From: Pocillopora damicornis
Lineage: Eukaryota
DNA length: 64,000 nucleotides
Assembly: GCF_003704095.1 (NCBI RefSeq)
Contig: NW_020847369.1
Span: 62,001 to 126,000 of the forward strand
Direction of reading: 5' to 3'
Made by a program: the position numbers and the translations under genes. Numbering within the stretch: the stretch's first letter is position 1; each line of letters begins with the position of its first letter. Of this stretch, positions 37,249 through 49,400 are shown in pieces. The notes beneath the pieces are model-generated. The model did no database searches and had not been told where the DNA came from. It saw only the letters and a list, made by a program, of their open reading frames with translations.

Positions 37249-37371
37249 GTTGCAAATTTTTACCACGTGCACGCAGAGCGCATGTACTTAAGAATATATA
37301 CGAGCCCGCAATTCTAACAAGAGAACCATTGCCTTGACAACTACAATAAACCGCTCAGGTTGGAATACAAA
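37249..37371. promoter_or_regulatory. Bidirectional promoter shared by NIFK (-) and MDH1B (+)
   Basis: Only 123 bp separate the two start codons. The interval contains CACGTG (37264-37269), GCGCATG (NRF1-like part, 37278-37284) and X-box-like ATTGCC-TT-GACAAC (37328-37341). Confidence 0.75.
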
Positions 37372-38781
37372 ATGGCGAAGTATGTTATTGCTGGAAAGGC
37401 AAATTGCCCCTTTTATTCTAAAGCAGAGCTTCTTGCCGATGAACTTTCGTTGAACTTACCAGATTTTAAAGTCCACAAGATCGTCAAGCAGCCAGAGGAT
37501 TGGGAAGGTTGGCTAAAAGAAACCTGCGAAGAAAAAGGATGGAAACATTCTAGTTCTCCTCTTGTTTGGAGGGAGCTTGTCGATCGAGGTGGAGCAGGTA
37601 TTCTTCTTGGCGGATGCGATGACTTCTTAGAAATGGCCAGAGGTTATTATGGCATCACTTCGGTTAAAATGAGTGATGAACTGTTAAATATCGCTCACGA
37701 AAACCTTCAAACAAAGATCGAAATTGATGCCGAAGAGGAACAGAGAAAGGCAGCCATTAATCCGTTACGAATTTGCGTGTCTGGTGCATCTAATACGTTT
37801 GCTTATGGTGTTTTGAGTTATTTAGCTCAAGGAGAAGTGTTTGGGATCGACCAAGAATTGAGTATTTATCTGCTCGACAAGGCTGACTCTCAGGAAGTTC
37901 TTAAAGGTACAGCAATGGAGATCCAAGATTGTGCATGGCCTTTGCTCAGAGATGCAGTACAGACATCGGATCCAGCGATCGCTTTCAAAGATGCCAGTGT
38001 GGCTGTTCTGCTCGATGGCATTCCCCTTGAAGAAGGAGTTGATAAAAAGGAGCAACTTCTCGCTAATGCTAAAATTTTTAAGGCCCATGGAGAGGCCCTT
38101 GACCAATATGCTAAGAAAGACGTGAAGGTGCTTATCGGAGGGGGGCCGGCAAGTGTCAACGCTTTTGTCGCCAGTAAATTTGCTCCCTCAATACCTAAGA
38201 AAAATATCTGTGCCCTGGCTCGTCTCGTGGAAAATAGGTCTAAAGGGCTCTTGGCCAAAAAACTGAATGTCAACACCGCAGGAATAAAAGATGTCATTCT
38301 TTGGGGTAATATTGGTGTTCTTACTACAGCAGACCCTAGAAATGCCAGGGTCCATGGCTTTGATGGTGCCATCTGGGGACCACATATTCCTGGATTCACC
38401 CGACACGTACCAGAAATGGTCCATGATGACAAATGGCTGGCAGGAGAGTTTTTAGAAACCTTAAAAAAGCCCATGAATACTGCCAAAAGCCCAAAAGGGA
38501 CCCCTCCCTTGCCAGGGAGCTTCGCTGTGTTAACTCAGCTTCGTGATCTGTGGCAAGGGACATCGTCAGAGATTTACTCTCTCGGGGTGTCCTCTGAAGG
38601 CTGGTATGACCTCCCTCAGGAAATCTTCTTTTCTCTTCCAGTTAAGTTCGGACAGGGCTCTTGGAAAATTGTTGACAACATTCCACTTGATGACTCTCTG
38701 AAAGCACAACTGTTGGCAATTGCTGAAGAGCTTAAGAACGACTGCGAAGAGATTTTGAATAAGCTTAGTTCAGTGTCTTGA
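37372..38781 (+). CDS. MDH1B: Putative malate dehydrogenase 1B (MDH1B-like), intronless CDS, 469 aa
   Basis: The start is the ATG at 37372 (aaaATGGCG); the ORF track begins at an upstream TTG. N-terminus MAKYVIAGKANCPFYSKAELLAD..LPDFKVHKI..SPLVWRELVDRGG..LLGGCDDFLE is typical of MDH1B and is followed by a degenerate MDH fold (VILWGNIG, GAIWGP, HDDKWL). Confidence 0.92.
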   Translation: MAKYVIAGKANCPFYSKAELLADELSLNLPDFKVHKIVKQPEDWEGWLKETCEEKGWKHSSSPLVWRELVDRGGAGILLGGCDDFLEMARGYYGITSVKMSDELLNIAHENLQTKIEIDAEEEQRKAAINPLRICVSGASNTFAYGVLSYLAQGEVFGIDQELSIYLLDKADSQEVLKGTAMEIQDCAWPLLRDAVQTSDPAIAFKDASVAVLLDGIPLEEGVDKKEQLLANAKIFKAHGEALDQYAKKDVKVLIGGGPASVNAFVASKFAPSIPKKNICALARLVENRSKGLLAKKLNVNTAGIKDVILWGNIGVLTTADPRNARVHGFDGAIWGPHIPGFTRHVPEMVHDDKWLAGEFLETLKKPMNTAKSPKGTPPLPGSFAVLTQLRDLWQGTSSEIYSLGVSSEGWYDLPQEIFFSLPVKFGQGSWKIVDNIPLDDSLKAQLLAIAEELKNDCEEILNKLSSVS

Positions 38782-40474
38782 ATAGATTTGTGATACAGAT
38801 TGTACATACTTAAGTAGAAATGTTAGTACCTTTTGACATGTTAAATCAACTTTAAAAAAGGTTCAAATCCAACTGACTAGTAGTCAATATTTGAGAGGTT
38901 ATGTTTTCCGCGTGGCAAAGGGAATAAAAACGGATTGATGTTCACAACACGACCGTTAAGTGAAGCATTTCAGCGGTATACTCATCAAACGATTCTTTTT
39001 GCTAGCCTGTAGGACAGGTGACAACTCTTCATGGTTCATTAGGCGAGCATGGGCAAGGGCGAGGCCAATGCAGGAAAAAGCGAGAAGAACACGAAGAGAG
39101 CGCGAGAGGATTAAGTGAAAAGCGCGAGAACATCCCAAGGTAAACGCAAGAATAACGCGAGGTGAGCGCGAGGGGCGAGTCACAGGTGATGAGAGGGCGC
39201 TGTCACTTCCCAAATCGAAAACGGTCTGAAGACAGTCAGTAGAGACCAAACTAAAAAAGATTTGCTGGTTAGGTGAACAGGAAAATCAGCCAAATATTGC
39301 AGGGAAACTCTAAGGGCGTCCCCATCGGGGCACAGTAAATGACGAAAGATCTCTCATGAGCATTCCTTGAATTCTAGATTTCGGTAAAAACTTTGCAATA
39401 CGCGCCTTGTTTACACTTAACGTTCAGTCAAATTGGAGCTAAAATTAATATGCGTTTCGCTTTCGTTAAGTGCGCGCTTGCTCTGGGAGTGGCCTCACTT
39501 GCGAGTAGGCTCTCATTCAGATTATCAGCGCTGCAACACGCTCGTTTCTCCGCCCGCGGGAATATTTGAAACGAGTCGGGGAGAGGTTTCCTAGAGGTCT
39601 GGGTTGCAGACCTCTCGCTGGGATCAAACTTGATTTAACATGAAACGGATGTGGTTGTTTGTTTTGTCCGCGAAAGATGTATTGCGCACCGATCCCAGCG
39701 CACTACCTCAGGGAAATGCTTGGCCTTGAAAATAAATTGGAAATTAAACCTTACAACCTTTTTTGTTTCATCTTCTTTCTTTCTTCGAAAAGCCAGGTTT
39801 TCTTGATATTTATTAGACAGAAAATGTCAAAGGAGTCTCTCTTGTGTGATGACTCTAAAATACGACAGCAGTTTTTCCGCGCGTCTCTTATTAAGACTGT
39901 CAAAGATCTGGAAGGGAGAACTCAGACATGATTTAAGCTAATGGTTAATTAAAAGCTAACCCGATGCTCTGCGATAAAACGTAGATATGAGCGAAAAGTT
40001 TCCTGTATTTAGATCATTTCTCGCGACATCTAGGTGAAAAACAGAACATTTTAGCTCCAACTCTAAAACGACGAAACCTTGTCGTGACATTCAAAGTTAT
40101 TGATAAATGACTAAAATTTGAGGTCATAAAGGATTGAGTTCCAACTTTTTCTCGACTGTTCCAGATCACTGAGGTCTGATTCGATTTACGTGCTCTAAGT
40201 TATATAAATTTGCGTTTGCAAATCATGATTGACAACATCGTGTTGTTTTTTATTTTTCCACCGCCTTTTAAATTTGACAGCTACCAGCTTTTTTCTTTAT
40301 GTAATATCATTGTGTTTCGATTAAAACGGTTATAAAATTATTCGCATTCATTAACATCTCCCTAGCCTATCGCAACAAAGTGACGTGGGCTGGAATATTT
40401 TCTTTTAAGTGATAACGAAAACAGCTGTAACACAAAACCTTTCAAAGCTGCACTTCACGACTAGACTATAAGAA

Positions 40475-42725
40475 ATGGCAGCGCTTGGAAAAGGTGCAAT
40501 CTTTTTAATTTTGTTTTTCCTGTGGTGCGCCTATGTTGTCCTTGGAATCTTTGTCTTTGCTGCAACAGAAGGAAATGTGGTGCATAATTCTCAGGAGCGA
40601 AGAGAACGACAGAACATGACTGGCTTGAAAGCTGAAACGATGGAGAAACACAACATGACCGAAGCTGAGTTTGAGACCCTCGCGAAGAAAATTCGTGAGG
40701 TGGCGAACTCGCACGAGGATTATCAAGATGAACGCCGATGGAATTACATAGACTCATTTTGGTTCGTGGTCGTTCTCCTCACGACTATTGGTAAGGAAAA
40801 AAAATTGATGTAATTAATGCAAAAATCATGACTCAGAAATAACAAGGGAACTAAGGCGTCGGCTGGGTTTGTTTTTATTTAATTAGACATGAATCTTTCA
40901 CGGCATAACAATAATAAAGAAAGATTGCTCCATGCATTATGATTGAAAAGGTATCAGATCAAGCTGTTGATAACTTTATGTTTTCTTTGCAAAGCATCAC
41001 GAAACATGCTTTCAAAAACTTTACATGGAAGAAACACGTAGTCATTCAGTCGCAATTTCAAAGTTCTGACTGTTTTCATTTCCTTTCAAGTAGTTTTCTT
41101 TCATTTTCATAAACAGACCGAAGTAACCATTGAATATTTGCATATCTTGCAACAATGAAAGTGAAAATTAGGACTTAAGATCAGTTGAAGCAACATAAAA
41201 ATTTATTTCAGGACTATCACTGTTTGGGAAAAAAAATATCGAAATAACTGGCACTATTTATGGGAACGTAAAGCCATTTACCTTTTAAGTTCGTCCACGT
41301 TTTTATAAAAGTGTCATCAACTCTGAGAATGGACACAGCAGTCAGCTGGATTTAAAACAATCAACCCTTTCACTCTCAAGATCTAATTAGTAATTCTCCT
41401 AACTATCTGCCATACAATTCTTATGGTGGGAGTTTGGAGATCGTTGTATTGGTTTAACTAATAATCCTCTAATTTACATATATATATTTCTTTATTCTCT
41501 TCACTTGTCTGCTTGATTTTGTTTTGACATTGTAAAGAGAAATTCTGCCTTGATCATGAGAAAATCTATTAATGCGTACTTTAATTCAGAACATAGATCA
41601 TGTCAAGGTTAACCTTCGCGAAGAACTCTCGAAGAACAAACCTTTCGTTTGCGAGATCATGTCTTGGAGTAAATTTTGTGGAAGTGAATTAATCCACCTG
41701 CTGCTTCAGTGGATCCTCTTTCTCGGTCTTCTAATTTTCTCTTGAAACAAACGAATGCATTAAAATAACTGGAACTTTCCCCTTTGAAGCGCATTTTCAC
41801 AGTGTCTTGTAATCACAACCAAAGAAATAACAACAGTCAATCGGAACAAATATTCTATTACAAGGAGCTAATCAGAAATCAAAGTTTAAAAAGCACATCT
41901 GCCTGAAGCGCGGGAAAACGCAAGTGAACCTGCATAATCAGCGGTTATTATGCACTCTTAAAGTCACGGCTTCACTGCTCTATTGTGAGGCTCTGCCACT
42001 GAATGCTGCGAAGTAATTCGCAAAAATGTCAGCAGCGTGACACGTTAACGGTTGGTTTTAATCTAGCTTCTGATTGGTTGAGAAGATGGCGCGGGTGTTT
42101 TGGACCAATCACAGGTCGAAGTAAATACAAATTCAGTGAACCCTGTATTACTTGCGACACTCAATTAAGAAAACCCCTTTTAACGCCGTGTTTACTTCAC
42201 TCAGGTTATGGCGACTTTTACCCAGTCACGGTCATTGGCAAGGTCGTGTGTGGGTTGTACGCCGTATTTGGCATCCCTATAACCATCTTGCTCCTGCGAT
42301 TTATTGGCCAGCAGATGCTACGCGGAGAAAGAGCGCTGATCACCGCAATTGAGAGAAGCTGTCTGAAAAGAAATGGGCCTCCGTGTCACCTGAACGAAAA
42401 ATGTTTCGTGTTTGGTTGTCTATACTTGTTAATATTGGTCCTTGGGGGAGCGGGTGCTTCAATGGTAACAGAGGAAGGGTGGAGTTATGGGGGATCCATC
42501 TACTTCTACGTCATCACATTCACGACCGTCGGTTTCGGAGATATGTATCCTCAAAAAGGAAGACATGTCACCATACCGTTCATATTCCTCGGTCTGACCG
42601 CCATCTCGAATATTCTTCACGCGGCTGCTGCATGGGCGCTGGTCAGACGTGTCACTGCGGGCTCAGACGAGAGCGAAGAAACTACGAAGTTAACGGAATC
42701 AACGGAGAAAGGAACTGAGGTTTAG
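40475..42725 (+). CDS. Two-pore-domain potassium channel (K2P/KCNK family), paralog 1, 2 exons, 278 aa
   Basis: Exon 1 40475-40790 plus exon 2 42205-42725. The intron splits P1 (TTIG|YGD), and P2 is FTTVGFGD. Four TM segments, with a 55-residue M1-P1 extracellular cap region. Confidence 0.93.
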
Positions 42726-43588
42726 ATGAAAAGATGAAAAGTAAGCTTGTGGAAAAACGTATTGTCGATTCAAACAGCTTCCTATGTCAAGAATAACCAT
42801 TAAAAGTATACTTATTAAGATAATTACAATCAGCTGAAAATGTAGAAAGTAGTGTAGAAGTGTAGTAGCGTAAGACCCAAAGAAAATTAATCTCAACAGC
42901 CTAGATTATTTTCAAGGTAACCATAAGTAAAATAAAAAAACGAACAAACTGGGAAAAGCGCGGGAAAACGTATATAGTTAAGTCCGGTGCGAGTTTGTTT
43001 AGCTCGCTACCTGATTGGTCGAGAGGGTGGCGCAAGTGAGGCGAGTTTTTTTAGACCAATCAGAGCGAAGTAAATAAACTTGAAGTAATCCTTGATCGTT
43101 TTGACTTAGACACTCAATTTAACGAAGGACAGGAATTTCTCGCTCTGGGTCTCGCACTACTTAGTTTGTGTGCATTAGAGAAAGCAAATTAAATAAGTAA
43201 ATTCCTTCGTTGTGTACAAGCGCTGGGGATGTAAGTGAAGGAAATCAAACTAAACATCGGACAAAGTTTTAACCTCTGAGTCGATCCTGTGGCAGGAGGG
43301 GGTGNNNNNNNNNNTAGTCACTCTTGCCCTCTATAAGGTCTGCTTACTAATAGAAGCAAATGGGACTAAATTTTAACATGTATGCTCGTTATATGCACTG
43401 GAGGTCAAATAGTAACGCAAAACATGTACGTTTGAGAAAATTGCTACTCTCTGTGGATTGATGTAGAAATGAAAAATTCGCAAAGAAATAGCAATATACT
43501 GCATTTTCTTAACTCCTAAAAGTATATGAAATAAATTTTGATTAGCTTTTGTTGTTGTGCTTTACATAATATCAAGATTTGCCTATAG

Positions 43589-43857
43589 AGCGCCTTTCAA
43601 TTGAATGTCCTAAAACCAAAGGTAAAGCTATCATAACAGCCAATCATAGCAAGACAAAAAACGCAAGGAGCCGATGAGATCACGAAGCAAAAACAAGCAA
43701 ACCGCTGAAGCGCGGGAAAACGCGAGTGACCGAGTCACGATTGGTTTTTAGGTTTGAATCTGATTGGATGAGAAAGTGGTGCGTTTTCTGGATCGGTCAC
43801 ATCATGAATTAAATCAAAACCAAGGCTCTTTTCAACTCTGAATTTAAAATCGATCTA
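43589..43857. repeat. Family A dispersed repeat copy between the two K2P genes
   Basis: Colinear with the 3507-3790 copy (gccaatca...aagcgcgggaaaacgcg.gtgacc...gattggttt...tctgattgg...gtggtgcg). Confidence 0.8.
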
Positions 43858-44372
43858 CTCTACTGAGATTAAATAGGAGTTTCCTCTTGCGACCAGCAGA
43901 GCAATTTTGAAAACTATTCGAAACTATTTGAAGAATAGGTATCCGGCAAAAATAAAAGCTAGTATTGATATCTTTGAGAGTAGCACGTTCAATTTTTAAT
44001 CAATATGGACTTCTTTACGAGGCACATGTCAAATCAAAGCGGACAGACGACCATTTTTCTCATCATGTCAAAATAAAAGTTAATTCGAATACCACTCGCA
44101 GCTGGAGTCACGAAACACCTACTTCAAATATGTAAATGTAACAATGTTTTTATCGAAACTGTTGTCAAACTGTTATAGTTATGTCTAATTTTATTCTCTA
44201 ATGATTGCAAAACAGCTGTAAAATGTTATTTATGAGCACGCAAAGTACGTCTAAGCCCTGAGGTTTAAAGGTTTCCTAAGCAACAAAAGTGACGTATATG
44301 CAAATTATTGGGTTTTCACAATCGCAAGATCACCAACAAAACAAACCTGTAGCATTATTAAAGTTTGCCGTC

Positions 44373-46452
44373 ATGGCATTACTCGCGGAAAAAGCGAAAC
44401 TACTTTTGATTCTCTTTATTTTATGGTGTGGGTATCTTGCGCTCGGAATGCTTGTGTTTACTGCATTGGAAGGCAAAGACGAGGTCGAGGAAGAGGAGAC
44501 GAAATGGAATCACGGTGATTCTGTCTGGTTTTCGTTCGTATTACTGACAACTGTTGGTAAGTAGTTAGAGCCAGACATAGCGAGTCGAACTTCCTTAGAT
44601 TTTTGTCGTGAGATGCCTCGATGCTCAGTAACAAGGTTTTCGACGACTTCATGGATGCTCGACCTAATCAAAACAAAGCTAATTCATTTACCATTCTACC
44701 GGCAAATTGAAGGCGTCTTGAAAGGATGAAGTTTTCTCGTAAATCAGTTTCAAAATAAGATTCACTGAATTACTCTTTAATACTACCCCCAAATCAATGA
44801 TGAATCTCGTTTGAAGTTTTCTTTGTAATTTATTTCATTTTTCAAAACACAATCAACCAAATTTGAGACACAATTAATATTTTGCGAAAAATTGAAGGTT
44901 TATCATTCAAACTTAAAATAAACGGCTTGATTCACTCACGGAACAAAGGCTAAGAACTATGGAAACTTGAATTCTATTTTCTTTCTCAGACTAGTAATGT
45001 GTTTCAAGAGGATAGTTTTATCAGTTTCACGAAATGTATGTTGCAAATTGAAAAAGTGATAATTTTCACCTGCTTAAAACTCTAATGTAACCACCGATGA
45101 AGCTACCAGATTCGACAGTTCATCGTCGCTGTTTGAATATAAAATTCATACATATTCATAATTTTTATATGAATTTTAGAATTTTTGATAGTTGATAGCC
45201 CCTTTAAAAAGTCAAGCTGTGCATCTGTTTTGTGCTTTATATGAAAACTTCCTCCCAGCGTCTTAGGTAGCCCATGGTTTTAGTCACTAAATATCGAAGC
45301 CAGCTGTCTTTGACTAATTCGGCTTTTCTTGTGATTACCATGCATAATCTCGTAGCACAACGGGGAAGAGCTCTGATTGGCTCACTTGATAATCATTGAC
45401 GGTCTCAACAAATTATCAAATTAGTTTTCTTTCAGCTACAAGTCTTTTACAAGAACACTTGTCGGGAAGAGCTTATCGTTTGTTGACAGCAGAAACCAGC
45501 GACGAGAGTCTTCTCCCTCTGCTCCAGTCCTCCGTGCGCCCACTCTTGGGGTAGTCAGGAATAAATGTACCGCATCTTAAAACATTCTTTGCCGTTAATC
45601 GGCTCAGATGTCTTTCCATTCTAAATTTCACCTGCCTGCCTCTACATGTTCCTCATGAACACAAGCTTATTTTGGAAACGGTTCTAATTCATCTCCTAGA
45701 GGGAGGGGAGGGAGGGGACACGATAAAATCATGTACTTGATCCCGCCATGAGATTCTATAATATTCTTGGGATCCTCCCCGGGCAGTTAATTGGCGGTCA
45801 ATTTCTCCTTTCTTTTCTGTTGATGACGACTGATGTGATCCCCGCTCCGTTCCCCCTGAAAACCATGTGATCCACCCAAAATTCTTCCACCCTCCCCCCG
45901 AGGGAATGATTAATGGTCCCTACTTTTCCTTTTTTATCTCGAATAGGCTATGGTGATGTAACACCCAAGACAGGTCTCGGCAAAGGTCTGAGCATATTGT
46001 ACGCCATTTTTGGCATCCCTTTGACAATTCTGCTCTTGCGACTTATTGGCTTGGAAATGCTTCACAGCGAGAGGAGACTCATCAACGCTATCGAGGGACG
46101 TTTTTTGAGAAGAAACCGACCACCCCACCACTTGCACCATAAGTGTTTCCTGCTCGCCATCTTGTTCTGGTTGTTGCTGCTTCTTGTGGGAGCTGCTATT
46201 CAGATGTTGGCCGAAGACTGGAGTTATGGAGATAGTCTTTACTTCTACACGATCACCTTCATGACGGTGGGTTTTGGAGATCTGGTACCACTCGCGAGGT
46301 ATATCAGCGTACCTCTTACAATGCTCGGGCTGGCAGCCGTTTCAAATATCCTGCATGGGGCTGCGTCACTTCCGCTGATCAGACGTATTACCGCGGGCTC
46401 GCTAAGGGATGAGGAAATGGCTGAAGTTGAGGAACAAGAAATAAGCGTTTAG
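44373..46452 (+). CDS. Two-pore-domain potassium channel (K2P/KCNK family), paralog 2 lacking the cap, 2 exons, 229 aa
   Basis: Exon 1 44373-44556 plus exon 2 45947-46452, with the same intron position as paralog 1 (TTVG|YGD). P2 is FMTVGFGD. Exon 2 is clearly homologous to paralog 1 (YAIFGIP.TILLLR.IG..ML..ER.LI.AIE; PP.HL..KCF; SNILH; RR.TAGS). Confidence 0.92.
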
Positions 46453-49400
46453 AAGGACTTATTTCGTTAATAAAACCGTAATGTCTGTTATTGCAGGTTT
46501 AACTCAGATCGCATGTAGCAATCAAGTGGCTAGATCAATCAGAGTCAAGTTTAACGGAGTGTGACGACTTGTACAAACTTATTTTATTTGTTTGAAAAGT
46601 ATCTATCGAAAAACGTATGGAACGTAGCTACCATAATGTCGTCCTGAAATGTAAAATCAGAAGTACTTCAAAGACGGGCGTCTAAGTTGAGATTTGAATT
46701 TATCGATATAGTATCAAGATTTACAAAAGAAAATTTTACCATGAAGCTTTTCAAAATATCGTCATTCTAGCGTCGATTGTTTTTAAAACAACTGTAATTA
46801 AAAAGTTTCTGTATAATAGTTCATCTTTTCTTCTCTCGTATTACTCAAGATTTCTTATGGAATTTTTGTGAAATTTTTATTATTAATTATCTAATTTATT
46901 CATCAGAGTTGTTAGTTTAGTTGATAGAGAGTGGGTAAGGTTTTTTGCAAAGGAAAATAATGGTACCGTTGTTTTTCTTGTTTTTTTAATCGATCATTAT
47001 TCTTCGTTCTAAACCTTCATGTTAGATTTTCAGCGATAACTATTATTACTTCTGTGTTGTTAACAGAAACAAAATATCAATAACCTTGTGATCAAATCAC
47101 CTCTCTGTAGAAATATCATGGAAAACGCTGAATAGATGTAAAATTTATACATAAAATTATACATAGATTGACGTATTTGGTTGCTGGCCAGTGAGCATTA
47201 AACTATTATAGTACTGACTGGACGAAATTGCACCCAGCCTCCCCTTTCCGATGGTAAAACGTCCTAAAAACCGTTTGGCTAGTTCAACGGTTTTATTTTA
47301 TTGTTTTAACAAAGCGGCCTCAATTTGTATGGCTACGCAGGAACAAAAGAGAGCTTGTTTCTACTCGACAGTCATGCGCAGTAGAGAAGAGCTCTGAGGT
47401 CGAGAATGCCTCCATTTCGGCTGGTTATTTGGTCCCACATGCAAAAATAATTTGAGAGAGAAAAAACATGGTGTATAAAAACAATATTACAAAACAAAAA
47501 CAACTTATTCGTTAAAGAATAATTTTCTTGGTTGAATTATATCCTTGAATTTCATAATCGCTCTGGAAACATCGCTGGCCATTCATTAGACTCGATATGC
47601 CACTTGGAGAAAAGGACCCACGCATTTAGTTTGAGCCTGGGGGTTAATAAAACAGCGGTCAAATATCGGGCATGCGCCAATGAATTTATTTTGGCCGGTT
47701 GCGCGCCAGTTTCCCGCGCAAAATTTGTTAAGTGTCACATCAAAAAATAAATTGGAGTCCACCCACATTAAAAACAAATTGCCCGCATTTGGTTTTTAAA
47801 TGGACAAATGTTCCGGGCTTGAGCATACTATAATATCGCTCGGTTGCCGACACTTAAAAATTGCACGCTTCTGATCAGACAGCCGGGCACGGTCTTAAAT
47901 GGAATAAATGCCCGGCAGTTGAAAATTTTCATCAAAATGCCACTTAAAACTTCACACAAGCATATTGAGTATTAGAAATGACAAACGATTCTAAGAACTG
48001 CGTTAGTTTTTTAGGTGGTCAAGCTTGGACGTACCATACTAAAAAACACATAAACATTTCAAAACTCATGAGAGGTCACGTTGGTTTCGTAGAATGTTGT
48101 CTTCGAGACCACTGCCTGGCGTAACAGTGAGGGAAATAAGGAAAAATTACAGAAAACCTAAAATAAGCCCATTGATGCTTTTTAAGATAATCCAAGTGAT
48201 TTTAAAATTATTTTGATTTTTGGTGAAAAAATTCCTAGCTTATCGAACCACAAAATCACCTGGTTGAGCAGACTGCCGGGAACCACACAAGCCAGTAATT
48301 CACGGTGTTTTAAAAGGGTATGAATGATAAATTAAATTGGTTCCTCTATTTGAATATGCTTTCTCAAGGTTTCTTTTTTCTACTTTTATTTCAATTTACA
48401 GATTTCTAAGAAAGTTTCAGTTTTCTTTCGTTTATTTGGAAGACAGCAGTTGATTCTTATGTTTTCCTTTTCAGCGGTTTCATTCAAAATTATTTACTAT
48501 TAACATTATGTGGTTTCCACTTGAATGTATCTGATTTAGATCGGTTTTTGTTATCATCGTATAGATTCCGCTTAGTTTCGCCATCTTTCCGATGGTTTCA
48601 AGTTAAAAACGCCCTTTGAAACAATTGGACGGAATACTGTTTTAATTTGACGGGCAATATTTTGTTCTTTTCATTAGGCTTGTGAGGTCAGTGATAATAT
48701 GCAAAATCTGGAAGAAATTGATTATCATAGCAATGCAGCGAATTGAATGCACGAAACAGTTGTTTGCCCAAAACATGTTCATAACAAGGTCTTAAAGGGA
48801 TCGATTCGTGGTTTTTATTTCTCCTTTACATATTTTTTTCATGAGAACATAATGCAACAGACAGGTGGCGAAAAATTATCGAATTTTCTACGCGTGAAAT
48901 ATTAGGAAGCTCAACTGTGAATATCATTGGCTGATTCTGAGGAATATTATATTATGGCGAGCGCGCAGCGAGGGCTCTTATTAAAAGACTCCACCGAAAT
49001 AAAGAGCGTTTGAACGAACATTAATTAGGAATACTGTTGGCAAAAACTTCGAGGTAAGTGAGCCCATTTATTCTATTGTATATCGCGGGTGAATTGGTTG
49101 GTTTGGAAGAAATATCTCGTTTACTTTGTTACATATTTTGAAAGGTTTGCTATGCACCAAAACTGCAAAATCGGAGGAAAATGTAACATAGTTAAACGTA
49201 ACACAATGTGGGGGCTCTTAATCCTTAGTATGCCTGAATTTGCGAGCGCACCGGCCAGTGGGTAAATGAAGAATCCAAAGTTTTGCAGTTGAACTGTTTT
49301 ACTTTTGTTATACAAAGCATTCCTCCTTCGTTTCTTGATCTGTGTGTTGGCGGTTTCATAGCTTTCACAAAACTTCGACGCATCTTAAAATGATTACAAC

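What the first reader, a model, noticed from the sequence alone, without database searches (positions are those of the whole stretch)
44373..46452. Cap-less K2P channel: tandem paralog has lost ~45 residues of the extracellular cap
Seen: between the end of M1 (EG) and the pre-pore-helix Trp, paralog 1 has 55 residues, while paralog 2 has only 10 (KDEVEEEETK). The difference lies within one exon, so it is not a missed exon. The frame, both filters (TVGYGD, TVGFGD) and the intron position are intact. Established: the helical cap is the structural hallmark of animal K2P channels; it contributes to dimer assembly and shields the pore from peptide toxins and classical blockers. Inference: this is a minimal 229-aa channel with an exposed, strongly acidic outer mouth. 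It could be toxin- or cation-sensitive, or act as a heterodimeric modifier of paralog 1.
Basis: partly seen in the sequence, partly recalled or inferred. Interest (0 to 1): 0.8.

Follow-up and report, generated by a model that had tools for sequence, protein, structure and literature searches.

The report
Naturally cap-less coral K2P potassium channel
A coral gene encodes a two-pore potassium channel that has lost the extracellular "cap" found on other animal channels of this family; it is expressed, conserved and under selection, so it offers a natural test of what the cap does.

Summary
Two tandem, two-exon K2P genes lie at 40475-42725 and 44373-46452. The M1-P1 linker is 55 residues in the first gene and 10 in the second. 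Both selectivity filters and the phase-1 intron are intact in both genes.

The short form is not an assembly or annotation artefact:
- Spliced RNA contigs from three separate studies carry exactly this exon 1 and this junction.
- A DNA run is collinear across exon 1.
- No cap-coding remnant lies nearby.

The window is Pocillopora damicornis. The gene is already deposited (RMX57521.1, XP_027057415.1), but I found no paper noting that it lacks the cap.

The short loop is conserved in other anthozoans:
- Stylophora has the same 10-residue loop.
- Three further coral assemblies show the same order: an MDH-like gene, then a capped K2P, then a short-loop K2P (13-14 residues).
- Montipora has an 8-residue loop and Nematostella a 6-residue loop.

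Exon 2 dN/dS is 0.27, against 0.22 for the capped neighbour. AlphaFold2 gives a confident K2P fold with no cap, and a homodimer prediction passes its controls.

In roughly 20 other K2P genes of this genome, and in all bilaterian hits measured, the loop is long. The strong acidity of the loop is specific to Pocillopora. Toxin or cation sensitivity and heterodimer roles remain untested. Verdict: a new variant of a known kind, of moderate to high interest.

The parts
44373..44556 (+). Paralog 2, exon 1 coding part: M1, a 10-residue M1-P1 linker, pore helix 1 and the first filter residues. It ends on the first base of the Gly codon.
   Evidence: Confirmed as a single uninterrupted exon by the spliced RNA contig L021 and by runs X1, X8 and X10.
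44475..44504 (+). Codons 35-44 (KDEVEEEETK): all that remains where paralog 1 has its 55-residue cap linker.
   Evidence: The AlphaFold2 model shows M1 running to residue 63 of P0001, an 8-residue loop, then pore helix 1. Variant 44491 A>G gives E40G in run X8.
44557..45946 (+). Phase-1 GT..AG intron inside the P1 filter Gly codon, at the same position as in paralog 1 and in the Nematostella gene.
   Evidence: Joint 44555->45946 in three RNA runs and absent from DNA run X19..
45947..46452 (+). Paralog 2, exon 2: rest of filter 1, M2, M3, pore helix 2, filter TVGFGD, a short SF2-M4 linker, M4, a short C-terminus and the stop codon.
   Evidence: dN/dS is 0.27 against Stylophora.
44067..44372 (+). 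5' UTR as seen in RNA contig L021. Run X1 extends it to 43783. It holds an in-frame upstream ATG at 44298, which RefSeq uses for its 254-aa model.
   Evidence: Orthologues start at the position of 44373.
46453..47243 (+). 3' UTR, at least to 47243.
40475..40790 (+). Paralog 1, exon 1. The 55-residue cap linker is encoded at 40577-40741 and carries two N-glycosylation sequons (N47, N60) and no Cys.
   Evidence: Joint 40789->42204 in three RNA runs.
42205..42725 (+). Paralog 1, exon 2.
   Evidence: P0032 from Pocillopora verrucosa is the full-length 278-aa orthologue.
42741..42746 (+). GTAAGC, 16 nt after the paralog 1 stop codon. The equivalent site in Stylophora is spliced onto the acceptor of paralog 2 exon 2, giving a read-through chimeric transcript.
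   Evidence: L043. In Pocillopora, run X10 record 7 runs from paralog 1 through the intergenic DNA into paralog 2.
37360..38781 (+). Intronless ORF of 473 aa, taken as malate/lactate-dehydrogenase-like from its position. It is the syntenic anchor upstream of the K2P pair.
   Evidence: A gene with Ldh_1_N and Ldh_1_C domains occupies the same position in L042 and L046. The window ORF itself was not scanned against Pfam.

Best explanation
Paralog 2 is Pocillopora damicornis pdam_00005756 (RMX57521.1, XP_027057415.1). It is a functional K2P subunit in which an in-frame deletion of about 45 codons within exon 1 removed both cap helices. The deletion left an M1-P1 turret of 10 residues, about as long as the M3-P2 turret.

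The subunit keeps everything needed for a K+ pore: four transmembrane helices, two pore helices and the filters TVGYGD and TVGFGD. It most likely assembles as a dimer around the pore axis through the pore helices, filters, M2 and M4.

Several consequences follow, all inferred:
- With so short a linker, M1 cannot be domain-swapped.
- There is no arch and no bifurcated extracellular ion pathway.
- There is no N-glycan.
- The outer mouth is open to the medium, as in KcsA or Kv channels.

Together with a short SF2-M4 linker, this makes the channel nearly four-fold symmetric.

Shown: sequence anatomy, expression, splicing, conservation, purifying selection, and a predicted fold without a cap.

Inferred: homodimeric assembly, K+ leak conductance, and the idea that the acidic turret substitutes for the cap's electronegative ion pathway in holding K+ near the filter.
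For: Anatomy.

Expression and splicing:
- L021 is a spliced mRNA contig.
- The same junction appears in RNA runs from three studies.
- Several Logan contigs encode the full 229- or 254-aa product.

Conservation of the short loop:
- Stylophora P0212 has a 10-residue loop.
- L045C, L046B and L047B have 13-14 residues, at the same syntenic position behind a capped paralog.
- A spliced transcript of such a gene exists in another coral, P0241: 220 aa on a 943-nt contig.
- Montipora foliosa and M. capricornis have 8 residues. Nematostella has 6.

Selection:
- Exon 2 dN/dS is 0.27 for Pocillopora against Stylophora, versus 0.22 for paralog 1.
- Among short-loop genes it is 0.17-0.42 for exon 2 and 0.44-0.52 for exon 1.

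Fold and assembly:
- AlphaFold2 gives pLDDT 88.8 and pTM 0.80, with M1 helix, 8-residue loop, then pore helix.
- The nearest solved proteins are TRAAK (E 5.7e-23), TASK-3 and TREK. TRAAK residues 61-107 have no counterpart in the query.
- The homodimer prediction scores 0.72 against a best control of 0.00. Runs agree in at least 73% of contacts and partner pLDDT is at least 78. The mark was reached by 21 of 30 solved homodimers and 0 of 23 solved monomers. The pass may be from memory of solved K2P dimers.

Literature: an engineered cap-less TASK-3 still expresses and dimerises (PMC6121469).
Against: - No electrophysiology exists for this protein or any orthologue.
- The engineered cap-less TASK-3 lost K+ selectivity and was active only in high external K+ (PMC6121469). 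A cap-less K2P is therefore not guaranteed to conduct normally.
- dN/dS is somewhat higher than in the capped paralogs. The Pocilloporid branch is long (0.55 changes per site). Both fit relaxed or changed constraint.
- In Stylophora, the RNA contigs I could see carry exon 2 only in unspliced form or in chimeric read-through form. The proper exon 1-exon 2 mRNA is not shown there.
- All RNA evidence is from assembled contigs, so expression level and tissue are unknown.
- The dimer score may reflect memory of solved K2P dimers.
Confidence: 0.6

Rival explanations
1. Paralog 2 is mainly a heteromeric modifier. It pairs with the capped neighbour, paralog 1, or with another of the more than 40 K2Ps in this genome. 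The resulting channels have half a cap or none, and paralog 2 conducts little by itself.
For: - The tandem arrangement is conserved across corals.
- Both genes are present in the same three RNA runs.
- Read-through transcripts join the two genes.
- K2P heteromers are well established in mammals (general knowledge).
- Engineered cap-less TASK-3 works poorly alone in physiological K+.
Against: - The cap is built from paired helices of both subunits (PMC8436263). One capped subunit would present an unpaired helical hairpin (inference).
- The homodimer prediction passes its controls.
- Exon 2 is only 55% identical between the paralogs.
- No heterodimer test was run, because the only complex job went to the homodimer.
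Confidence: 0.2
2. Paralog 2 is a slowly decaying duplicate. It is transcribed mostly as read-through from paralog 1 and has no function of its own.
For: - The Pocilloporid branch is long.
- dN/dS is higher than in capped paralogs.
- Read-through and chimeric transcripts exist.
- The few differences among Pocillopora transcripts are mostly nonsynonymous: 2 of 3 in L021, plus E40G, S>C, I>V and S>N.
Against: - Frames, filters and splice sites are intact in Pocillopora damicornis, P. verrucosa, P. meandrina and Stylophora, and in the syntenic genes of three more corals.
- dN/dS of 0.27 is far below 1 and close to the value for the capped neighbour.
- Properly spliced mRNA contigs with their own 5' UTR occur in several studies.
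Confidence: 0.08
3. Paralog 2 is a channel of an internal membrane (endomembrane, symbiosome or secretory compartment). Without cap and glycan it would parallel the cap-less vacuolar TPK channels of plants.
For: - There is no N-glycosylation sequon anywhere in the protein, while paralog 1 has two in its cap.
- The protein has very short termini.
- Protist two-pore channels among the hits also have short loops. That TPKs are vacuolar comes from my own knowledge.
Against: - No targeting motif was identified and there is no localisation data.
- The gene descends from ordinary capped K2Ps and does not share ancestry with TPKs.
Confidence: 0.07

Closest known systems
Animal K2P (KCNK) channels; nearest solved ones are TRAAK/K2P4.1, TASK-3/K2P9.1 and TREK-1/-2
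   Same: - Architecture of four transmembrane helices and two pore domains.
- Filters TxGYGD and TxGFGD.
- Phase-1 intron in the P1 filter glycine codon.
- Best sequence and fold matches.
- It nests inside a clade of capped coral K2Ps.
   Different: - It lacks the Cap domain that reviews describe as the distinctive K2P structure (PMC8436263). It therefore has no arch, no extracellular ion pathway and no scope for M1 domain swap.
- The SF2-M4 linker is only about 5-6 residues. Among mammalian K2Ps that length is reported only for TRESK.
- There is no N-glycan, and the cytoplasmic tails are very short.
Engineered cap-less TASK-3 (TASK-3/2loop2; PMC6121469)
   Same: A K2P without a cap, in which the M1-P1 linker is reduced to the length of the M3-P2 linker. 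That construct still expresses and dimerises.
   Different: - The construct is artificial and also swapped the P1 sequence. It lost K+ selectivity, was active only in high K+ and became TEA-sensitive through a ring of four Tyr.
- The coral protein is natural and conserved, and it keeps its own GYG P1.
- It has Thr and Val at the TEA position, not Tyr.
Plant and protist two-pore K+ channels (TPK-like) and fungal TOK
   Same: Tandem-pore K+ channels with short outer turrets and no cap. Examples among the hits are Acrasis P0158 and Thecamoeba P0183.
   Different: - They are not the closest relatives.
- The coral gene lost its cap secondarily. Residues homologous to both ends of the capped linker flank the deletion.
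- It has no EF hands or 14-3-3 site.
Capped tandem neighbour (paralog 1; Pocillopora verrucosa 'sup-9' P0032)
   Same: Same locus, same strand, same exon structure and same clade. Exon 2 is 55% identical.
   Different: - Paralog 1 keeps the 55-residue linker with two glycosylation sequons.
- It has Tyr at the external TEA position of P1 (GYGDFYP).

Membership tests
K2P / KCNK two-pore-domain K+ channels | Two pore domains and four transmembrane helices in one subunit | tested here: met
   Pfam Ion_trans_2 hits exon 1 and, as two stretches, exon 2. The AlphaFold2 model shows M1, P1, M2, M3, P2 and M4.
K2P / KCNK two-pore-domain K+ channels | K+ selectivity-filter signatures in both pore loops | tested here: met
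   TVGYGD and TVGFGD are present and conserved in orthologues.
K2P / KCNK two-pore-domain K+ channels | Extracellular Cap domain formed by a long (about 50-70 residue) helical M1-P1 linker | tested here: not met
   The linker is 10 residues. The model has an 8-residue loop and no cap helices. TRAAK residues 61-107 have no counterpart. By my loop measure, the first loop was about 49 residues or more in all the two-filter bilaterian hits measured. The one exception is a truncated pigeon gene model.
K2P / KCNK two-pore-domain K+ channels | Descent from K2P genes: phylogenetic position and the shared intron in the P1 filter codon | tested here: met
   It lies within a 100/100 coral clade whose other members are capped. 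The phase-1 intron sits at the same codon in both paralogs and in Nematostella. That this intron is also shared with vertebrate KCNK genes is from my own knowledge and was not tested.
K2P / KCNK two-pore-domain K+ channels | Dimeric assembly around one pore | tested here: inconclusive
   The homodimer prediction scores 0.72 against a best control of 0.00. The interface runs through filters, pore helices, M2 and M4. The pass may be from memory of solved K2P dimers.
K2P / KCNK two-pore-domain K+ channels | K+-selective background (leak) current | not testable with these tools
   Needs electrophysiology.
Plant/protist TPK-type two-pore channels | Closest kinship to TPK sequences; cytosolic EF hands or a 14-3-3 site | tested here: not met
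   The nearest relatives are animal K2Ps. The C-terminus after M4 is only about 25 residues and has no further Pfam domain.

The most novel reading that the evidence does not exclude
Hexacorals have shed the K2P cap more than once: in the syntenic second paralog of stony corals, in the Montipora/L042 lineage (26 then 8 residues) and in Nematostella. The products have been kept for tens to hundreds of millions of years as working, nearly four-fold-symmetric K+ channels with an open outer mouth. If so, the cap is dispensable for assembly, trafficking and K+ selectivity in a natural K2P. These channels would also have pharmacology that capped K2Ps do not have, such as access for pore-blocking peptides or cations.
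Probability: 0.4. Interest if true: 0.75.

Novelty: new variant of a known kind. Interest (0 to 1): 0.6.

Why it matters
The Cap domain is described as the distinctive structure of K2P channels. It is invoked to explain their resistance to classical pore blockers, their domain-swapped M1 and their bifurcated ion exit, yet its role is called poorly understood (PMC6121469, PMC8436263). The only cap-less K2P studied so far is an engineered TASK-3 that lost selectivity.

A natural, conserved and expressed cap-less K2P sits next to its capped sister gene in the same locus. That gives a matched pair for asking several questions directly. Is the cap needed for dimerisation, surface expression, selectivity-filter stability and blocker resistance? 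What compensates when it is gone?

It also shows that the M1-P1 linker is evolutionarily labile in anthozoans (55, 26, 13-14, 10, 8 and 6 residues). That could not be seen from bilaterian K2Ps.

Tried and rejected
- Missed exon or alternative cap exon: rejected. RNA contigs are continuous across exon 1. There is no other joint into exon 2 in Pocillopora and no cap-like coding remnant in 42726-47300.
- Assembly artefact: rejected, with a caveat. DNA run X19 is collinear, but its independence from the assembly sample is not shown.
- P0125, a 63-aa apparent orthologue with 'IIVG' in place of the filter threonines: rejected as evidence of decay. Every difference is a C>T change, so it is most likely assembled from bisulfite-converted reads.
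- Pigeon P0122, an apparent short-loop vertebrate K2P: it is a truncated gene model whose cluster mate is a 308-aa KCNK6-like protein.
- Resolving one cap loss against several, using the exon 2 tree: inconclusive.
  - The link of the Pocilloporid pair to the other second paralogs has only 56/61 support.
  - AU tests reject neither 'all shortened coral loops are one clade' (p 0.29) nor 'Pocilloporid p1+p2 are one clade' (p 0.21).
  - A third AU test was lost when the script was killed.
- ESM Atlas look-up: nothing useful.
About half of the 41 K2P loci were therefore not examined for loop length.
- One gene at C4004:20140-20938 has an N run where the linker lies.
- The exon 1 of L045 gene B was not found.
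- The look-up of encoding contigs had no record for P0007 or P0013 and no DNA for P0015.
- Heterodimer prediction was not run, because the single complex job went to the homodimer.
  - Exons were searched by reference. Full-length work used database proteins P0001 and P0201, which the tools returned.
  - In two local scripts the two exons were concatenated in memory, only to count sequons and codon differences.
Full report
**1. What is in the sequence**

Two K2P genes lie head to tail on the + strand. Each has two coding exons.

- Paralog 1: exon 1 at 40475-40790 and exon 2 at 42205-42725.
- Paralog 2: exon 1 at 44373-44556 and exon 2 at 45947-46452.

In both genes a GT..AG intron in phase 1 splits the glycine codon of the first selectivity filter (TT[IV]G|YGD). 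All four exon translations hit Pfam Ion_trans_2. Exon 2 is 55% identical between the paralogs.

Exon 1 aligns at both ends with one 45-residue gap. Between the 'EG' that ends M1 and the Trp before pore helix 1, paralog 1 has 55 residues and paralog 2 has 10, KDEVEEEETK. The filters are TVGYGD and TVGFGD, and the product is 229 aa.

**2. It is not an artefact**

- A Logan contig from run ERR9592214 (L021, 1786 nt) aligns to the window at 99.2-99.6% identity in two blocks, 44067-44557 and 45946-47243. It is a spliced mRNA with this exon 1, this junction and both UTRs.
- I laid contigs of four runs on 40450-46449. RNA runs from three different studies (X1, X8, X10) each contain the joint 44555->45946 (GT..AG) and the paralog 1 joint 40789->42204.
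- The DNA-type run X19 has neither joint. It has a contig collinear over 43764-45280 without gaps. X19 may be the sample the genome was assembled from.
- No other joint enters exon 2, and tblastn with the paralog 1 cap finds nothing in 42726-47300.

There is therefore no hidden cap exon. These data are assembled contigs, so they show presence and structure but not expression level.

**3. Identity of the gene**

Cluster look-up shows the exact 229-aa protein as RMX57521.1, 'hypothetical protein pdam_00005756 [Pocillopora damicornis]'. It lies on a contig of 632,130 bases, the length of the window's contig C4004.

RefSeq XP_027057415.1 ('potassium channel subfamily K member 4-like', 254 aa) starts at the in-frame upstream ATG at 44298. 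Near-identical proteins exist in P. verrucosa and P. meandrina.

The gene model is therefore public. Five full-text searches found no paper noting a natural animal K2P without a cap. The only 'cap-less' K2P in that library is an engineered TASK-3.

**4. How unusual it is within the genome and the family**

The genome holds at least 41 K2P exon-2 matches, many in tandem arrays.

- Every other exon 1 that I recovered, roughly 20, has a long linker with a conserved K[YF]N[MI][TS]xx[ED]F motif.
- One gene has an N run at that place and was left alone.

Among the 150 best representatives in a search of 1.84 billion proteins, I measured the first loop in the hits with two filters. It was about 49 residues or more in almost all of them. 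The short-loop exceptions are:

- anthozoan proteins;
- protist TPK-like channels (Acrasis, Thecamoeba);
- unnamed metagenomic proteins;
- a truncated pigeon gene model.

**5. The short loop is conserved in corals**

- The Stylophora pistillata orthologue (PFX30477.1, 222 aa) has the same loop length, ES-KDKVEEYEAK-W.
- Three unnamed coral assemblies (L045, L046, L047) show a capped K2P followed on the same strand by a second K2P. Its linker is 13-14 residues, of the type NNAEREDHYYRYE.
- In L046, as in the window, a dehydrogenase-like gene lies just upstream.
- Alignment A1 shows that the short linkers keep residues homologous to both ends of the long one (N-x-ERE ... D-[HY]-Y). This marks an internal deletion, not an ancestral short state.
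- A 220-aa product on a 943-nt Logan contig (P0241) is a spliced transcript of such a gene in another coral.

A different sub-clade has one gene behind the dehydrogenase-like gene:

- L042 has a 26-residue linker, also seen as the spliced product P0229.
- Montipora foliosa and M. capricornis have 8 residues.

Nematostella vectensis XP_001637271.1 (229 aa) has 6 residues. It has the same intron phase, but it lies outside the coral clade and in a different genomic neighbourhood.

**6. Phylogeny**

The tree uses exon 2 only (168 columns), so that no joined model was needed.

- It gives a 100/100 coral clade.
- Within it there is a 97/92 clade of second-position short-loop genes.
- There is also a 100/100 pair of Pocillopora paralog 2 with Stylophora, on a long stem of 0.55.
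- The link between that pair and the short-loop clade is weak (56/61).

AU tests reject neither a single origin of all shortened coral loops (p 0.29) nor a Pocilloporid-specific duplication (p 0.21). Synteny favours an old, shared second paralog. The number of independent losses is at least two (corals and Nematostella) and is otherwise open.

**7. Selection**

| Comparison | dN/dS (Nei-Gojobori) |
|---|---|
| Exon 2, paralog 2, Pocillopora vs Stylophora (dS 0.33) | 0.27 |
| Exon 2, paralog 1, same species pair | 0.22 |
| Exon 2, other short-loop genes | 0.17-0.42 |
| Exon 2, capped genes | 0.11-0.29 |
| Exon 1, short-loop genes | 0.44-0.52 |
| Exon 1, capped genes | 0.18-0.38 |

This is purifying selection, somewhat relaxed relative to the capped genes, and not neutral decay. 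All frames, filters and splice sites are intact.

**8. Structure**

AlphaFold2 on P0001 (the 254-aa form) with a 54-sequence alignment gives pLDDT 88.8 and pTM 0.80.

- The M1 helix runs to residue 63.
- Residues 64-71 are a loop.
- Pore helix 1 is residues 72-84.
- The rest is a standard K2P body.

Both filter-to-helix linkers are about five residues. A review states that a short SF2-M4 linker is found among mammalian K2Ps only in TRESK.

Foldseek and phmmer give TASK-3, TREK-2, TRAAK and TREK-1 as the best matches. In the TRAAK alignment, residues 61-107 (the cap) have no counterpart.

A two-copy prediction of residues 26-254 gave the following:

- a score of 0.72 against a best control of 0.00;
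- at least 73% contact agreement between runs, and partner pLDDT of at least 78;
- a mark reached by 21 of 30 solved homodimers and 0 of 23 solved monomers;
- an interface through filters, pore helices, M2 and M4.

Because K2P dimers are solved, this pass may be from memory. It shows likeness, not binding.

**9. Mechanism proposed**

The protein is a K2P by descent that has reverted to the simple outer architecture of other K+ channels. With an 8-10-residue linker, M1 must pack on its own subunit. The review attributes domain swapping to the interposed cap helices.

There is no arch, so ions leave straight along the axis and the mouth is exposed. The protein has no N-glycosylation sequon, whereas paralog 1 has two in its cap.

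In the engineered cap-less TASK-3, the authors linked loss of selectivity to loss of the cap's electronegative ion pathway. The acid-rich Pocillopora turret (net -4) could play that role, but this is inference.

The acidity is not conserved. Net charge is about -1 in Stylophora, -1 to -2 in the other corals and +1 in Nematostella, and E40G occurs in run X8.

The external TEA position holds Thr (P1) and Val (P2). From established Shaker/KcsA work, I therefore do not expect high TEA affinity. Notably, the capped paralogs carry Tyr there (GYGDFYP).

**10. Rivals**

- A heteromeric modifier role is possible. The evidence is the tandem, co-present and partly co-transcribed genes. It was not tested, and it would be structurally awkward because the partner's half-cap would be unpaired.
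- Pseudogenisation is unlikely given sections 5-7.
- An internal-membrane channel is speculative.

**11. Verdict**

This is a new variant of a known kind: a naturally cap-less K2P lineage that is conserved and expressed, sitting beside its capped sister gene. The functional claims await electrophysiology.

Noticed in passing
window 42204-44555 and 42741; locus L043: There is read-through transcription from paralog 1 into paralog 2. Run X10 has one 4096-nt contig that runs from paralog 1 (spliced), through the whole intergenic stretch, into paralog 2 (spliced). In Stylophora, RNA contigs join a donor just after the paralog 1 stop codon straight to the acceptor of paralog 2 exon 2, skipping paralog 2 exon 1 (products P0003, P0215, P0218). 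Contigs cannot prove a single molecule.
   Followed up: partly
window 44298: There is an in-frame upstream ATG, which RefSeq uses for its 254-aa model. Orthologues in Stylophora and other corals start at the position of 44373, so the 229-aa form is the conserved one.
   Followed up: partly
window 37360-38781; L042 1908-3317; L046 1-384: An intronless ORF of about 470 aa lies upstream of the K2P pair. In L042 and L046 the gene at this position has Ldh_1_N and Ldh_1_C domains. It is a conserved syntenic anchor upstream of this K2P locus in several corals.
   Followed up: partly
window 41250-41650 and 43650-43850: Contig depth is very high in both DNA and RNA runs: thousands in the first stretch and about 155 in the second. 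There are many loose ends and odd joints. These look like high-copy repeats, one inside the paralog 1 intron and one in the intergenic stretch. A poly-C run near 43314 breaks the contigs.
   Followed up: no
G000 contigs C138:40113-79773 and C4052:13148-71135: There are large tandem arrays of K2P genes, at least 10 in each. The genome has at least 41 exon-2 matches. All exon 1 sequences recovered from these arrays have long cap linkers.
   Followed up: partly
protein P0125: This 63-aa apparent orthologue of paralog 2 exon 1 differs from it only by C>T changes (A>V, L>F, T>I, S>F, H>Y). It is most likely assembled from bisulfite-converted reads, and such proteins sit in the big protein library.
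   Followed up: partly
window 46255-46290 (paralog 2) and 42530-42570 (paralog 1): The SF2-M4 linker is only about 5-7 residues in this coral clade, in capped and cap-less genes alike. The neighbouring C4004:18-28 kb K2Ps have about 14 residues. Among mammalian K2Ps a short linker is reported only for TRESK.
   Followed up: partly
L042 8207-8437; P0229: There is an intermediate M1-P1 linker of 26 residues in another coral. It has its own N-T-S sequon and is also seen in a spliced transcript. Its closest relatives in Montipora have only 8 residues, which suggests stepwise shrinkage.
   Followed up: partly
L045 8673-9362: The middle gene of a three-gene array has an intact exon 2 that is 93% identical to the short-loop gene C. 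I could not find its exon 1 in the 6.5 kb upstream.
   Followed up: no
G000:C4004:20140-20938: This K2P gene has an N run exactly where its M1-P1 linker lies. It was left unfilled, so its loop length is unknown.
   Followed up: no
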